From: Auanema rhodensis
Taxonomy: Eukaryota; Animalia; Nematoda
Length of the DNA: 64,000 bases
Assembly: GCA_964057225.1 (NCBI GenBank)
Contig: OZ059894.1
Span: 16,120,001 to 16,184,000 of the forward strand
Direction: 5' to 3'
A program made the position numbers and the translations under genes. The notes under the pieces are model-generated. The model worked only from the letters and a program-made list of their open reading frames with translations. It was not told the DNA's origin and did no database searches. Of the stretch, positions 2,925 through 14,372 are shown in pieces; position 1 is the stretch's first letter; the number at the start of each line of letters is the position of its first letter.

Positions 2925-5900
2925 ATGGGAAACGAACAATCCTTTAATTCTGTTGATACTATGAAAACTGGAAGCCGACGAAGTCTGGATGCTACTCTAC
3001 TACGACAAGTAAGAGATTTTCCTAATTTTAATAAATCACTTGTGACGTTTAAACAATGATGTCATAGTTTTTTAGTTAGTTTACTGGTTTATTTATAAAC
3101 ATGCGTATATACATGTATGTGTAAATATTAGATAAATTCGAATACATTTAAAAGTAAAAATAAGAAAAATCAAAAATAGTAATCAGATAATTCGTTTTGT
3201 TAACCTGTTCCTCTTATTTTTGAGCACAGAGCACAAAGTAGTGTGGCGTATCTGATGTTATATTTCAAGAAATGAGACACTTCGGCGTGTTTACTAGTTT
3301 TCTTTGCAATTTTTTTTTAAAAAATATTAAGTTAATTCCAAATAAATTCAAAAAATTTAAACAATTGTCTAGTTTTTTTTAATAGTTTTTGATCTTTGCA
3401 TTTATTCATCAACCCTTGTCATCAGCATTTCGAAGTCAAAGTTCTCTTTGGAACGTGGGGTTCGTTGTCCTCAGACATCCTTTCCTCGGTCTCTTTTTGA
3501 TAATTGGCTCATAAGAAGGACTAGGAAAGTTCGAAAAAGGAAGGACAAGATCTAGTAACAATCGGGGATTAAACAGAGTTGGAAGAACAAAGTTGCTGTC
3601 AGCGGAAGAAGAAGCTTCAGAAGCTTTTAAACGCGTCCGCCTCATCATCATAGGCTTGAATAAGTGTACGTGCTCAACTTCTGACTCTGACCTATCATTC
3701 TAACTCTAATACGAAATTTAAATTTTATTTTTGAATTTATGACTTGATTGTTTTCTATCGCGAAGTTAACTTTTGGGTTCTAATATAAAGAATCAAAAAT
3801 AATAAAGACTTTGAAGATATTTTAACATAAAAGTTTAAAAGATTTCCCTGCTTATCCAAACAAACAATGTTTTTTAACATTAAATTTTTTCAAGCATAAA
3901 GCTAATTTCTATTGAAATATTACATCATTTTTCGAACATTTTCTCAATAAGCTTTAAAGAATTATTCAGCTTCATTGACTTTTTAAGAATAAAAAAAGGT
4001 TATTTATCAAAAAAAATCATAACTATGCCATATAAGATTCAGAAAATAAATCTTAATGTTCATAGCACATTGGGGTACTTCATATCGTTCATCATATTGT
4101 TCATTGGGACACAAATACCAACAACACTTCCTTTGATTTTTGCTATTTCTTCAAAATGTATTTTATATAATATATTCGAAAATATGACATGAATATATAT
4201 TATATTTAGTTAAAAGATAGTCCTATTTCTGGAAACAAAGTGATAATATTGATAGTAAGTACTCATAAGGGAGTAGAAGAATGTGAATGTAAAAATCTTC
4301 ATGTATGTCAACAGAATGATGAAAAGGGGACGATTTATTTTATAGCTAAATTACATAGCTTCATCTGTTGGCATTTATTTATGATTCACCATAGAAGAAA
4401 GGAGAAATAAAAAAAAGAAAAGAGAATAAGAGAAGGCGAGAGAGTAAGATGGAAAGAGAACGATAGGAGAAAGCTCCTCTTGTCGTTGTCTTCGTTGTCG
4501 TCCTATCTTCGTTATCCTCATGATGCTCTAAGATCCAACTCAGTTCTTCTATTTTCTTTTAGCTGTGCTCATTTTTCTTGCCAATAACTTCATAAAATTT
4601 TTTTAGTTTGCTTGTATAAGGATTACATTACAAATTAATTTCATGAATTTTGCAAGATTTACAGGCTTATTTTCCTTCTAGCTGTTTTTTTTGCTAATCA
4701 AGTGCAATTCCGTCCTATGCTTCACCTATTTTAGAAGGTGTTTCATGCATGGAAATATGGCTGACAGGAAGAAAATTAAGGAACAAGTGCATAACTGTGT
4801 TATTCTCTTACAAATCATCTAGAATAGTAATTATGCAATTCTAACCTATACTTTAAAAGAATGTCAAGTTTTGGAAGCTTGAGAAGAGGGTAAAATGATT
4901 CCAGTTATGTTTGTCTATTTTCGTAGATTTGTCATGGGTCAACACACTCAACTACATTTTTACAAAAATATTACATCATATTTAATTTTTTTAAGGGGAA
5001 TTCTTGTGCGGTTTTGCGAAAAAAATAGTTGTTTTGAATTTTTACGTGAAGTCCACGTGTATTATGCAGCCTATTTCATCTTTTATAATGTTGAGAGCGG
5101 TTGTTTGTTCGTTTTTCTATAATTTTCTATATAAACTAGTTATCAACGTCTTCAATATTTTGATCTTAAGCCTTTTCCGTTTAGTGATTCTTTGGCCATT
5201 TGGTATAGTCACATCTTTCTCCAAAATGCTGATACTATGACAAAAGGGTGTGGTAGTAAATTTGACGAGAGTAACGATTTAATCTGGTAATGGCGTCAGA
5301 TTTCCAAAGTAACACTTTTAAATCTTTTCGAAGCTCACCAATACTGAAATCTAACTCTCAGTTGAAATTGTCATACTTTTTACTGACTCATTCTATATAA
5401 GAATCAACCATCAAAGTTTTTGTTACCAAAAATCAAGTATTTCCTCACATTATCTAAATTGAAACTTGTATGGAAAGCTGAAACCCGAAGAAGAAAGTTC
5501 TTTTTTTTTTTCAAATTTTCACCAGCCTATTTGAACATCTTTTCGACCCCATTGCTATCCCCTCCCCGTCTCCGTGACATTCGAACTTTGGGAGGGGAAC
5601 TCATTCTGTTTTCTTTCTGGCTCTTACCTCATTTCAGTTTGTTTTTTTTTTGTGAATAATAGAGAAAAAGAGACTAAAAAGAACAAAATATGTTCCGCAT
5701 CATACCTGACGAGCCTGTTTTCTCGATATATTGCAGAATTCACATGTCGCTTATTGGTCTTTTGCGAGCATATTTTATTTATATTTCTATGCATTCCTTT
5801 CCTTGTAACAAACTAAAATATTATCTAAGCTATTCACCTACAGTTTCTTATCTTCTACATTTTTGAGTTTTTATAAATATTTTTCATCATTATGAGGGCT

Positions 5901-9977: not shown

Positions 9978-11620
9978 TCTCCCAAGTTGGAAGCCTAAAA
10001 ATCTGAAATATAATTTTTCAGGAAAACTGAGAAAAGTGCAAAAAGAAAAGTGAATGTAATATGATTTCTTCTAATTCAAATATGGAAGGTACAGCAATTA
10101 ATAAACTAGTTCGATAGTTGTGAATATGACCTCTCTTATTGGGCAGTGGGATGACCTAGTATAGTAAGATGTGACCTTCCTATTTCGTACCACCTACCTT
10201 TTCTCTGAAATATTGTCATTTTGCTCAAGGATTTGCTCAAAGACAACATTTGTCAACAAACCAGCAGATTTCTGCTTCCTCGACGAGGTGGATGAGTTTT
10301 CCGAACAAGGAGCATATAAGTGCTGCGTAGTTAAATACTTCTTCAATATTTCCAATTATCATTTTTTCAATGTTTTGTTCTTCATAACCTTCAAACGACC
10401 TCTAAAAGAAGGGTGGACCTAAACTCAAAGAAAATAAGTAATGTATGCATTTCTCTTTAGAATTGCATACCGCAAATACTCTTAAATTTACTTGTTTTGT
10501 AGTTTTCTTGTCTTTCTAAGTTTGTAATCAATGTTTTTATGGACAACTTATATTCCAAAATGATAGCTGTCATGAGAATTTTTTTTTACTCTTCAAAAAA
10601 AATGAAATTTTTTAGGTCTTATCTCATACATGCATTATCGAATGAATATTGTTCACATCTACTTCAGTATGTTTACTCTGACTATACGCTTTTGAAACTA
10701 TTTTTATTTTAACGTAGAATTTCTCTGAATTTTACACCATCTAGAAACTGTATCATATTCCAAATTCATTCACATAGTCCGTTATCGTAATGCTTGATTG
10801 CATCAACCATTCTACACCTTGTATTCTCGCAGAGATTTTCCTGGGGTTATGGTAGCTCATTACGCAATTTTTGTAGCGGAAGGTAGGAAAGCTTACATTT
10901 TCTCTTTCGATCTCTTTGTCTGTTCCAATTAAATTTTTATATTCAATCTTATTTTTGTTTTTGTTTGTTTTTGTTTTTATTATGTATTTTATGTATGGAT
11001 ATGTTTTGTCACGTATCTAATTAGAATTGCGTGGAATGCTACGTTAAACATCACATGACTTCGTATGTCAATCACTGTGTATACATGTAGAAACAATATA
11101 CGGTTGTAATCAGTTTTAACTTGAAACTTTTAGAATGCTAATTTTTTTTCTATCCTTTTATCTTCTATTTTCTAGTCTTTGTTATTTTATAAGTTTTCTC
11201 ATATGTCGTTTTTCACATGTTGTTTTCCCAAATTTCATTGTTTTTATTATTCGAATAAATTAATCATTTGAGTTAATTGTTTTAACTTAACTTAATCTCA
11301 ACTCTTCAATATCTTCATAGTTCTATATTTACGATTTTTCTGGATATTTAAAAAAATTTTTTTTCGTAATTACACTCTTTTCGGTTAATATTTGTACATT
11401 AAATGTCTTTATTTTTTTTAATCTGATTTTTTGCAGTTTCGTGTTTTGCTGATCTTTAAGTGATCTTCTTTTACTGATGAAATTACTGCGAAATGGGTCC
11501 TGGTGCGACAGGCATGAATTTCGCAACACCGTAAAGTGGGCGGATTATTTGCTCTGCAAAGGACCGTCAGTCCTATTTTCAGCTTAACGGCCAGTGTATC
11601 TTATTAGAAGTTTCAGCGAT

Positions 11621-11638
11621 ATGATCGCTGGATTCTAA
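11621..11638 (+). promoter_or_regulatory. uORF1 (MIAGF*) in atfs-1 leader
   Basis: ATG ATC GCT GGA TTC TAA, 4 nt after the TTTCAG acceptor ending at 11616. Confidence 0.7.
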
Positions 11639-11733
11639 GATAGAAAACTTTCTATTGTTATTTGAACGATTCAAGGTAATTTGCTGTTTTTACCCTCTTA
11701 GCATTTCTATAATTTGATTATGATTTGCAGAAG

Positions 11734-11865
11734 ATGTCGCCCTTACGAAGCTCTGAGAGTGCGGAATCTCGAAATGTTGTCCAGAATTACCAGAATTACT
11801 ACGTCCATGGGACCACAAGTCCTAGGAGGGTGTTCCCTGTTAAGGGACGCCCAAACCGCTCCTAA
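11734..11865 (+). promoter_or_regulatory. uORF2 (43 aa), out of frame, overlapping the atfs-1 start
   Basis: ATG 11734 to TAA 11865; the main ATG at 11774 is 40 nt downstream in a different frame. Confidence 0.7.
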
Positions 11866-13151
11866 GGTTGCCCCAACCTATAATATAGAGCAGCATATCT
11901 TGCATGATCATGCTGCCTATTGTAAAATATCTCTTCCACCACGACAGAGAAAGTAAAAATACATTGATTAATTTGTCTTTAATTCATAGTTTTGCAGCTC
12001 CAGTTCAAGCTGTGATCCGTTTCTTGGAATTGGTCCTGGTGGTAGTGAATCAATGAATGATCTCGTTGACTTGGAACTTTCTTCCAAAACTCCTTGCCGA
12101 TCTCGTGTTGCAAGTACATCCAGTAAGAACTCATATATTTCTTATTATATTATATTTTTTCTTGTGCAGACTCGACAATAGAAGATTTGTTTTCATCAGT
12201 TCGGTTTAAATCCGAGTGCGAAATTGAAAATGAGAGTGATGAAAGTTTTTTAGAAGGAGACAGAGTTTTCAATTTCTCGGTTAGTTCAGTTCTTATAAAA
12301 TCCACTATGATGAAAAACATGCTAATCATGAAAAGAGCGCCGTTTGCTCTTACCCCCGTGTTGTACAACTTGTTAACTGAGTGGAATTAACCTGTATTTT
12401 TAAAAAATTATCTTTTTTTGTTGATTATCAATTTTATCATTTTTAGAATCCACACGCCCAGTATTTTGTTTCGTTAACAGACTTAAATTTAAGTTCTGAT
12501 AATGATGAAAAATGTCGATGGGATGCTTGGGAATCACCATTTTCATCTGCAGCCAATGTTAAGATAGAAGAACCTGATGTAGACGAATGCTCTCCGAGTT
12601 CAAGTCCTAACCCCGAAGAAACACTAGCTGTAGTGCCAAACATAAAGCCGGAGCAAGTATGCATTAGTTCTGGTTTTTGTTTTTTAATTTTTCTGTTTAG
12701 TACGATGATTACGAAGTCAAACCAGAATGCAGTGTTCAATCTGAGAGCAATAGGTATAGTCCTGTTGATGGTTGGTATTATCAACCAGTTGTGAAAAAAC
12801 GTGGTGTTACTTTGAAGGTATATCTTTAATTTTTAAAAATTGCAATGGAAAAAAATTTAAGCCTCGTGTGGACGATGAAACTGAACGGCGCCGCGCCATG
12901 AATCGGGTTGCTGCTTTACGATATCGAGAAAGAAAAAGAAGGGACAAACACCAGTTAAAAATGTATGTTCTTTGTAGCTTATCAGCAACTTGCATTTTTC
13001 TCCATTTGCAAATTATTTGTTTTATCATTTCACCTTATCTGATTCCAGGCAGCTTCGTGAAATGGAATTAAGGAATAGAGACTTGAAACAGCAGGAAGTC
13101 CGGCTTTTAATTGAAATATCGACAATGAAGTCAAAATTGCACAATGCATAA
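11774..13151 (+). CDS. atfs-1: ATFS-1, mitochondrial-UPR bZIP transcription factor
   Basis: N-terminal MLSRITRITTSMGPQVLGGCSLLRD resembles the ATFS-1 targeting sequence; DPFLG and WDAW blocks; bZIP KKRGVTLKPRVDDETERRRAMNRVAALRYRERKR matches the remembered C. elegans ATFS-1 basic region; seven coding exons join in frame. Confidence 0.9.
12301..12385 (+). ncRNA. Intronic box C/D snoRNA, predicted U6 snRNA guide (mgU6-53/SNORD8-9-like)
   Basis: Terminal stem TCCAC/GTGGA, box C ATGATGA 12307-12313, box D CTGA 12377-12380; CATGCTAATC before a D'-like ATGA is complementary to U6 GAUUAGCAUG; lies in the longest atfs-1 intron. Confidence 0.85.
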
Positions 13152-13528
13152 AAATATATATTATTTTTTTATCTATGTTCGTAATTTCAATGTAATGAAT
13201 GTATCATTCTTTTTTTTCTTTTTTTTTGCAATCGGGGGGACAATGTGTGGGACGGGTTGGAAGAAAAATGAAACTGGTTCCAGAAATTATTTTAAATTCT
13301 GAATGACAGTCCTTCGCTGTATTCTGTGTAATAGAAGACCAAGATGAAGGATAAATCTTCATTTCTCGGGTGTTTTTTGTCTGGATTTTTATTTTAAAAT
13401 TTCGCTGGTCACCGCAGTCGCAAATTCGCGTCACATGTGCGCTTCATCGCTGATTCAGCTCCGACGTTCATCTTCCTAGCCTCTCGTATTCCCTTCAAAG
13501 GAATACTTACACATATTTTTTATTTAAT

Positions 13529-14372
13529 ATGAGTGATCGTTGTATTTTCTGTGGATGGAATCGTTCCAATTGTTATAAGGACATCAAATTTTTCGCTTTA
13601 CCGAAAGAGCCTGGTCTTAAACGTCTTTTGTGGATGCATGCTGTTCAAAAAAAAGTAAGCATTAATTAAATTAAGTCGATGTGTTTTGTTTTTAGGTTAT
13701 TAAAAGGCACGATAAAATTTGTAGTATTCATTTTCGACAAGGTAGACCTTCAAATGATCCTTCTCACGAAGATTTCATACCTCATTTGTTCTTGAATCCT
13801 GAAAAAACGTCCTCTGAGGTTTTTCGGTTTAAAAAAATTGAATTTTATCATTTAAATGTAGGTTCTTTCCTATTTGGAAAATGAGGATATGAATGATGCT
13901 CCTGCACCAAGAAAGTCGAATGAGAAACAGGGTAATATTGTGTTTCGATTAAATTTGCTTGTCATGTGCTCATTTTAATTGATGTTGATAGGCCCCAATA
14001 ACATCAATTTTCAGATACTAGTCCACCAGAAAACGATGATACTTCCGCCAATAATAAAAAACCAAATATTTTGAGAGGCAAGAGGGTAAAAAGATTATTT
14101 TTTTGTTTATTGTTTTATTATTTTTGTAATAGAAGTGCACAACAGTGATAACTGCGAGAATACTTGAACCGGTACAGTTTTTTGTTCACAAACTTTAATA
14201 TTTTCTGTTTTTAGCGTTTAGAAGCTGGTGTCAAAAAAGTTTGTGTGGTAAAAAAGCATGTAATGCTCTCAACATTTTCTAGTCCTAATTTAATTATTGC
14301 TAAGGATTCTAGAAATCAAAGTAAGTTCATTTGTACCTAAACAGCATGATGTTTTTATTCTCAGAGCTATAG
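13529..14372 (+). CDS. THAP zinc-finger protein
   Basis: MSDRCIFCGW...FFALPKEP...LWMHAV...ICSIHF...FIPHLF shows the C2CH THAP signature with conserved P, W, F and P. Confidence 0.85.

What the first reader, a model, noticed from the sequence alone, without database searches (positions are those of the whole stretch)
12301..12385. U6-methylation guide snoRNA hosted in an atfs-1 intron
Seen: canonical C and D boxes, a terminal stem and an internal hairpin AAGAGC/GCTCTT. The 10-nt CATGCTAATC preceding the D'-like ATGA is complementary to U6 GAUUAGCAUG, and the D+5 rule points to the A of the catalytic AGC triad (human A53). Known: vertebrate SNORD8/9 guide U6 Am53. A second stretch, CCCGTGTTG, matches 18S CAACACGGG but is not in D+5 register. 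Inference: spliceosome modification may be transcriptionally coupled to a mitochondrial stress factor, and the uORF-repressed host could yield snoRNA without protein.
Basis: partly seen in the sequence, partly recalled or inferred. Interest (0 to 1): 0.75.

Follow-up and report, generated by a model that had tools for sequence, protein, structure and literature searches.

The report
Intronic snoRNA predicted to methylate U6
An 85-base guide RNA sits inside an intron of a worm stress-factor gene, is conserved in a related worm, and most likely directs methylation of one base in the catalytic core of the U6 splicing RNA; it is an ordinary new member of a guide family already known in vertebrates and plants.

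Summary
Window 12301-12385 (+) has a C box, a D box, a 5-bp terminal stem, an internal hairpin and a 10-nt element (12318-12327) just upstream of a D'-like AUGA. That element is complementary to the metazoan U6 segment GAUUAGCAUG.

Spliced RNA contigs from four runs show it lies in a genuine 167-nt intron of an expressed, SL1-trans-spliced bZIP gene.

The same RNA sits in the same intron in Auanema sp. JU1783. Stem, boxes, guide and D' are 36/36 identical. The D-side spacer is 4/11 and the intron flanks about 40-50%.

The best Rfam matches for both copies are snoU6-53 and plant snoR53Y, in the same guide/D' register, but well below the gathering scores.

The 18S match is not conserved and overlaps the likely C' box.

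Not shown: the mature RNA, U6 methylation, this genome's own U6 sequence, and orthology of the host to C. elegans atfs-1.

The orthologous genes of two strongylids lack the snoRNA, which argues against an old functional tie to the stress factor.

Verdict: a new member of a known kind, of modest interest. Earlier scan notes describe other U6-guide snoRNAs in this genome, but not this one.

The parts
12301..12385 (+). Predicted mature box C/D snoRNA, about 85 nt
   Evidence: Sequence; fold; 72/86 aligned positions identical to the Auanema sp. JU1783 copy at about L001 4497-4581; best Rfam hits are snoU6-53 and snoR53Y
12301..12305 (+). 5' half of the terminal stem (TCCAC), pairing with 12381-12385 (GTGGA)
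   Evidence: identical in JU1783, so there is no covariation to count
12307..12313 (+). C box AUGAUGA
   Evidence: invariant in JU1783
12318..12327 (+). D' guide CAUGCUAAUC. It forms 10 Watson-Crick pairs with U6 GAUUAGCAUG (human nt 49-58). T 12323 lies opposite the A of the AGC triad.
   Evidence: duplex -14.0 kcal/mol; guide plus D' 14/14 identical in JU1783 while the neighbouring spacer is 2/4; same register as the Rfam RF00377 and RF01279 consensus
12328..12331 (+). D' box variant AUGA (consensus CUGA)
   Evidence: Aligned to the CUGA D' of snoU6-53 and snoR53Y; invariant in JU1783
12333..12351 (+). Internal hairpin (AAGAGC / GCUCUU, loop 12339-12345) between D' and the likely C' box
   Evidence: the 5-bp core AGAGC/GCUCU is kept in JU1783 while the loop changes (15/17)
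12359..12364 (+). Putative degenerate C' box UGUUGU, 12 nt upstream of the D box (inferred)
Evidence: GUUGUA is conserved in JU1783 and recurs at the matching place in metagenome contig L007.
12366..12376 (+). D-side spacer, probably not a working guide
   Evidence: Only 4/11 identical between the two species
12377..12380 (+). D box CUGA
   Evidence: invariant in JU1783
12280..12446 (+). Host intron (GT..AG, 167 nt), fourth intron of the trans-spliced mRNA and the longest; the others are 44-86 nt
   Evidence: The joint 12278->12446 (cut +1) is present in contigs of all four RNA runs. The snoRNA starts 21 nt after the 5' splice site and ends 61 nt before the 3' splice site.
11437..13183 (+). 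Host gene: SL1-trans-spliced, 8-exon bZIP gene (ATFS-1/ATF4-like); main ATG 11774, stop 13148-13150
   Evidence: Seven GT..AG joints and a loose end CAAGTTTG at 11435; bZIP_2; ATF-4 is the best PDB match of the ortholog's bZIP; orthologs P0002-P0005

Best explanation
Window 12301-12385 (+) encodes a functional box C/D snoRNA of about 85 nt. It is transcribed as part of the pre-mRNA of an ATFS-1/ATF4-like bZIP gene and released from its 167-nt fourth intron by splicing and exonucleolytic trimming down to the snoRNP. No promoter of its own is expected, because only 21 intron bases precede it. After assembly with fibrillarin, NOP56, NOP58 and SNU13, the 10-nt element upstream of the D' box (AUGA) pairs with U6 snRNA over GAUUAGCAUG. 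This places the 2'-OH of the A of the catalytic AGC triad (human A53) at the fifth paired position, for 2'-O-methylation. The D-side spacer is not a working guide.

Shown here: the motifs, the intron and its splicing, host expression, and selective conservation of boxes and guide. Inferred: accumulation of the RNA, snoRNP assembly, pairing with this species' own U6, and methylation.
For: The motifs and their register are present.

Conservation: the same unit lies in the same intron of the ortholog in Auanema sp. JU1783. Identity there is stem + C box 13/13, guide + D' 14/14 and D box + stem 9/9. This contrasts with the D-spacer at 4/11, the C-to-guide spacer at 2/4, and the intron flanks at 12/24 and 25/61. 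The flanking coding exon is only about 50% identical at the protein level.

Family resemblance: the two best Rfam matches, for both species independently, are snoU6-53 (17.3 and 17.8 bits) and plant snoR53Y (16.0 and 19.6 bits). Both align C box, CAUGCUAAU and D' in one register.

Host: the intron is removed precisely in RNA contigs of four runs, and it is the gene's longest intron.

Background: human U6 Am53 is guided by SNORD8/9 = mgU6-53 (PMC7960923; PMC5855946).
Against: Both Rfam scores are far below gathering (36 and 43 bits), and nothing passes gathering anywhere in the window.

No mature 85-nt RNA was seen. The only RNA over the intron is one low-depth 172-nt contig in run X1 (12286-12457). 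It runs past both ends of the snoRNA, so it is probably unspliced precursor.

The duplex is only 10 bp, and D' and C' are degenerate.

This genome's own U6 was not available to me. The target sequence rests on the known conservation of metazoan U6.

Only two species carry it, and the stem has no compensatory changes.
Confidence: 0.75

Rival explanations
1. It is a real, conserved C/D snoRNA, but the conserved element does something other than methylate U6 A53. It might pair with another RNA that carries the same 10-mer, or bind U6 as a chaperone without catalysis, because the D'/C' pair is too degenerate to seat fibrillarin.
For: D' is AUGA and the best C' candidate is UGUUGU. The duplex is only 10 bp. 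No methylation data exist. A conserved block UACCC(U)CC next to C' is unexplained.
Against: The guide/D' register is the same as in the vertebrate and plant U6-53 guide families. Degenerate D'/C' boxes are usual in active snoRNAs (general knowledge). mgU6-53 is named as the methylation guide for this site (Ganot et al. 1999, as cited in PMC5855946).
Confidence: 0.13
2. One reading: placing the guide in the stress-factor gene functionally couples U6 core methylation to mitochondrial-stress signalling, with the uORF-repressed mRNA serving mainly as a snoRNA carrier.
For: The snoRNA has no room for its own promoter, so its output should follow host transcription. In C. elegans, intronic ncRNAs without an upstream motif correlate with host expression (PMC1474057). 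An earlier scan note reports conserved uORFs on this mRNA.
Against: The orthologous genes of Cylicocyclus nassatus and Ancylostoma duodenale have only short introns and no such RNA within 3 kb, so the association is lineage-specific. snoRNAs are long-lived and hosts mainly need steady expression. The host mRNA is well represented in all four runs. No regulatory data exist.
Confidence: 0.05
3. It is not an RNA gene. The conserved block is an intronic splicing or transcriptional element, or a chance set of motifs.
For: The C/D-plus-stem architecture alone is expected 0.3 times per window and the 10-mer 0.17 times. No mature RNA was observed.
Against: Conservation follows snoRNA logic exactly: boxes, stem and one guide are invariant, while the other spacer and the hairpin loop are free to change. 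The best database matches are the two families with the same guide.
Confidence: 0.04

Closest known systems
Vertebrate mgU6-53 / SNORD8 and SNORD9 (Rfam RF00377 snoU6-53/MBII-28)
   Same: Box C/D RNA hosted in an intron. Both carry the antisense element CAUGCUAAU, then one base, then D', so the fifth position lies opposite U6 A53. Both have a single working guide on the D' side. It is the best or second-best Rfam match for both worm copies.
   Different: The worm RNA is shorter (85 nt against a model of about 110). D' is AUGA, not CUGA. The pairing covers U6 49-58 rather than about 50-60. The internal region is unrelated apart from a hairpin. It scores 17-18 bits against a gathering score of 36. 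The host gene is different.
Plant snoR53Y (Rfam RF01279)
   Same: The consensus carries CCAUGCUAAU + N + CUGA in the same register. It is of similar size (76 nt), and it is the top match for the JU1783 copy.
   Different: It scores 16-20 bits against a gathering score of 43. There is no similarity outside the boxes and guide. I did not check the plant family's genomic organisation.
Other U6 methylation guides (SNORD7/mgU6-47, SNORD10/mgU6-77, SNORD67, SNORD94) and the U6 guide snoRNAs noted elsewhere in this genome
   Same: They are C/D snoRNAs that modify U6 (PMC7960923). SNORD10 gives a weak hit through the boxes.
   Different: They target different U6 positions with different guides. According to unchecked scan notes, the other guide in this genome targets a cytosine and has a tRNA-like promoter.

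Membership tests
Box C/D snoRNA (general) | C box RUGAUGA near the 5' end, D box CUGA near the 3' end, brought together by a short terminal stem | tested here: met
   AUGAUGA 12307-13, CUGA 12377-80 and the 5-bp stem 12301-05/12381-85. All are invariant in JU1783.
Box C/D snoRNA (general) | Accumulates as a stable small RNA bound by fibrillarin, NOP56, NOP58 and SNU13 | not testable with these tools
   Only assembled contigs of four probably poly(A)-type runs were available. They show the spliced mRNA and one low-depth intron contig, and no 85-nt species.
U6 Am53 guide family (mgU6-53 / SNORD8-9, RF00377) | Antisense element of 10 nt or more against U6 around the AGC triad, immediately upstream of D or D', with the fifth paired base opposite A53 | tested here: met
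   There are 10 Watson-Crick pairs and T 12323 is the fifth base upstream of D'. The register is the same as the family consensus. The test used the canonical metazoan U6 segment, not this genome's U6 gene.
U6 Am53 guide family (mgU6-53 / SNORD8-9, RF00377) | Reaches the Rfam gathering score of the family model (36 bits) | tested here: not met
   17.3 bits (E 0.23) for the window and 17.8 bits (E 0.16) for JU1783; no hit at gathering. Similarity is confined to boxes and guide, so common descent is not established. I claim functional equivalence only.
U6 Am53 guide family (mgU6-53 / SNORD8-9, RF00377) | U6 carries 2'-O-methyl at the AGC-triad A, and this depends on the guide | not testable with these tools
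   No modification data were available. I found no paper on U6 ribose methylation or an mgU6-53 equivalent in nematodes.
Intron-encoded, splicing-dependent snoRNA | Lies in sense orientation inside a spliced intron of an expressed host gene, without its own promoter | tested here: met
   The intron 12280-12446 is removed in contigs of four runs and the host is expressed. Only 21 intron bases lie upstream of the snoRNA. Absence of a promoter is inferred from that spacing.
Host = atfs-1 (C. elegans ZC376.7 ortholog) | C-terminal bZIP of ATF4/ATF5 type plus an N-terminal mitochondrial presequence | tested here: inconclusive
   bZIP_2 is present and the best solved relative is ATF-4, 1ci6. The N-terminus MLSRITRIT...LGGCSLLRD is conserved in four nematode orthologs and looks like a presequence by eye only.
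Host = atfs-1 (C. elegans ZC376.7 ortholog) | Reciprocal best match or synteny with C. elegans atfs-1 | not tested

The most novel reading that the evidence does not exclude
The U6-A53 guide is an ancient animal/plant snoRNA lineage that nematodes kept in a compact form with an AUGA D' box. In the Auanema lineage it moved into the ATFS-1-like gene. There its supply, and so methylation of the catalytic AGC triad of U6, follows transcription of a mitochondrial-stress regulator, giving a stress-tunable mark in the spliceosome's active site.
Probability: 0.04. Interest if true: 0.65.

Novelty: new member of a known kind. Interest (0 to 1): 0.3.

Why it matters
It adds an unannotated but well-supported U6 methylation guide to a nematode genome, and it predicts that the A of the U6 AGC triad is 2'-O-methylated in rhabditid worms as it is in vertebrates. 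I found no nematode report of such a guide in the library searched. Because the guide is single-copy in the window, short and intronic, a clean deletion is feasible. That would allow a direct test of what this active-site methylation does in an animal. The proposed link to mitochondrial stress signalling is not supported by the comparative data.

Tried and rejected
Rfam:
- At gathering thresholds there was nothing in the window or in the loci.

Searches for more orthologous loci:
- The representative search with exon D by reference gave one ortholog.
- The word-index searches with P0002 and with the P0002+P0003 profile gave only Heterorhabditis, Cylicocyclus and Ancylostoma.
- The N-terminal exon by reference gave nothing.
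- The Heterorhabditis protein has no contig on record.
- No Caenorhabditis locus could therefore be examined.
- The spliced host protein was never joined.

Metagenome scan for C box + guide + AUGA:
- It gave five contigs. None has the worm architecture with a proper stem and D box, so none counts as an ortholog.

- Rejected. It is out of register, it is changed to TCCATGTTG in JU1783, and it overlaps the likely C' box.

D-side guide:
- Rejected as functional, at 4/11 conserved.

THAP domain in the ORF at 13529-13666:
- Not confirmed by Pfam.

Literature:
- Zemann et al. 2006 and Deng et al. 2006 are not held.
- The supplements of PMC3342880 are not held.
- Papers containing both 'ZC376' and 'snoRNA' do not link the two.

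Full report
**What is there.** On the + strand, window 12301-12385 reads as follows:
- a 5-bp stem half TCCAC (12301-05)
- one base, then the C box ATGATGA (12307-13)
- a 4-base spacer, then CATGCTAATC (12318-27)
- ATGA (12328-31)
- a hairpin AAGAGC / GCTCTT (12333-38 / 12346-51)
- a pyrimidine-rich stretch, then TGTTGT (12359-64)
- an 11-12-base spacer, then the D box CTGA (12377-80)
- the stem half GTGGA (12381-85)

ViennaRNA recovers the terminal stem and the hairpin in the centroid structure. The energy z-score of -1.95 is unremarkable, as expected for a C/D RNA.

**Is it more than chance?** Not from the motifs alone. A scan of my own for RTGATGA ... CTGA closed by a stem of 5 bp or more finds exactly this one case in 128 kb of both strands, against 0.3 in block shuffles. 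The 10-mer occurs once against 0.17 expected. The weight comes from the register and from conservation.

**Genomic setting.** Contigs of four public runs from one study, labelled 'organism A', match the window without a single difference. Their type is not on record, but they are evidently RNA because they are spliced. They join 11673>11729, 11952>11998, 12122>12170, 12278>12446, 12656>12701, 12814>12859 and 12962>13049, all GT..AG. One contig carries the loose end CAAGTTTG at 11435. From my own knowledge this is the 3' end of the nematode SL1 leader.

The RNA therefore lies in sense orientation in a real 167-nt intron (12280-12446) of an expressed, trans-spliced 8-exon gene. This is the gene's longest intron; the others are 44-86 nt. 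The snoRNA begins 21 nt after the 5' splice site and ends 61 nt before the 3' splice site. That leaves no room for a promoter of its own, so processing from the host intron is the likely route. In C. elegans, intronic ncRNAs without an upstream motif track their host's expression (PMC1474057).

Run X1 alone has a 172-nt contig of depth 4.5 over 12286-12457. It overruns both ends of the snoRNA and the 3' splice site, so it is probably precursor. It is no evidence for the mature RNA.

**The host.**
- The exons encode a bZIP protein (Pfam bZIP_2).
- I searched exons separately, by reference. The joined protein model was deliberately not built or searched.
- Exon D (12447-12656) found one ortholog of 301 aa, which a source names as Auanema sp. 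JU1783.
- A profile search added Heterorhabditis bacteriophora, Cylicocyclus nassatus and Ancylostoma duodenale proteins.
- All share the N-terminus MLSRI(T/S)R...GCSLL...PTAPK and a C-terminal bZIP.
- The closest solved bZIP is ATF-4 (1ci6, E 1.5e-4).

This fits an ATFS-1/ATF4/ATF5-like factor, as an earlier scan note also concluded. No Caenorhabditis protein was retrieved, so orthology to atfs-1 is untested. The window's species is a close relative of Auanema sp. JU1783: the protein is about 50-87% identical exon by exon.

**Conservation.** The JU1783 gene (L001) has the same RNA in the same intron.

| Segment | Identical / compared |
|---|---|
| Stem + C box | 13/13 |
| Guide + D' | 14/14 |
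| D box + stem | 9/9 |
| Hairpin (stem kept, loop changed) | 15/17 |
| Block from hairpin to TGTTGTA | 14/16 |
| C-to-guide spacer | 2/4 |
| D-side spacer | 4/11 |
| Intron flanks | 12/24 and 25/61 |

This is the pattern expected of a C/D snoRNA with one working guide on the D' side. The stem is invariant, so no compensatory change can be counted.

I take TGTTGTA to be a degenerate C' box, because it lies 11-12 nt from the D box. This is an inference.

**Target.** CAUGCUAAUC is the exact complement of GAUUAGCAUG, which is human U6 nt 49-58. The computed duplex is -14.0 kcal/mol. With D' = AUGA, the fifth base upstream (T 12323) faces the A of the AGC triad, human A53. Human U6 Am53 is assigned to SNORD8/9 = mgU6-53 (PMC7960923; PMC5855946). 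U6 is the most conserved snRNA and its AGC triad is essential (PMC5855946).

In permissive mode, the best Rfam matches for the window are snoU6-53 (17.3 bits, E 0.23) and plant snoR53Y (16.0 bits). For the JU1783 copy they are snoR53Y (19.6 bits) and snoU6-53 (17.8 bits). In all four alignments the C box, CAUGCUAAU, one base and the D' UGA line up. The register is therefore that of two independent families carrying this same guide element.

The scores are well below gathering (36 and 43 bits), and nothing in the window passes gathering. I therefore claim that it works like mgU6-53, not that common descent is shown. I could not read this genome's own U6. Earlier scan notes report large arrays of intact-looking U6 genes about 9.7 Mb away, which I did not check.

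**Host association.** The Cylicocyclus and Ancylostoma orthologs (L002, L003) contain only short introns. Within 3 kb on either side they have no match to the guide pattern or to a covariance model built from the two worm copies (R1). The pairing of this guide with this gene is thus specific to the Auanema-like lineage, as far as four species can show. That argues against an old functional coupling between U6 methylation and the stress factor. The coupling idea remains untested speculation.

**Literature.** I found no report of a U6 ribose-methylation guide at this site in nematodes. The C. elegans paper I could read names CeN128 for U5, and CeN94 and CeN104 for U6 pseudouridines (PMC1474057). 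Two key C. elegans snoRNA surveys are not held, so 'not previously described in nematodes' cannot be asserted.

**Verdict.** The snoRNA is real, conserved and intron-hosted, and it very probably guides 2'-O-methylation of the U6 AGC-triad adenosine. It is a new member of a known kind.

Noticed in passing
window 11435-11437: A contig of run X3 carries the loose end CAAGTTTG just before 11435, upstream of the acceptor TTTTGCAG|TTTCG. This looks like SL1 trans-splicing of the host mRNA at about 11437.
   Followed up: partly
window 12286-12457: Only run X1 has a separate low-depth (4.5) 172-nt contig covering the snoRNA intron and 11 nt of the next exon. None of the other six introns is covered in any run. 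This could be precursor or a splicing intermediate stabilised by the snoRNP, or simply noise.
   Followed up: no
window 12351-12358 (UACCCCCG); L001 about 4547-4555: A block UACCC(U)CC between the hairpin and the putative C' box is conserved between the two species. It is not explained by any box or guide.
   Followed up: no
L007 443-531 (+): Metagenome contig JXWU01069650.1 has C box, CCATGCTAATC (11 nt complementary to U6), ATGA, about 26 nt, CACGTTGTAG, 11 nt, then ATGA. This is the same order of parts as the worm RNA, including the GTTGTA block. It lacks a terminal stem and a CTGA D box, and its organism is unknown.
   Followed up: partly
L006 2506-2641 (-), L004 2571-2712 (+), L008 1426-1489 (+): Metagenome contigs hold short C/D-like units, tandem in L004 and L006, that carry the identical CATGCTAATCATGA. 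Their terminal stems are TGCCA/TGGCA and their D boxes are of xTGA type. Two tRNA genes lie next to the L006 units. They are possibly U6-53-type guides of other eukaryotes.
   Followed up: partly
window 11731-11865: An ATG at 11734 opens a reading frame that overlaps the main start codon at 11774 in another frame (the listed ORF, from a TTG at 11725, is 46 aa). This is the uORF treated in a separate scan finding. I only confirmed that it lies in the mature spliced mRNA.
   Followed up: partly
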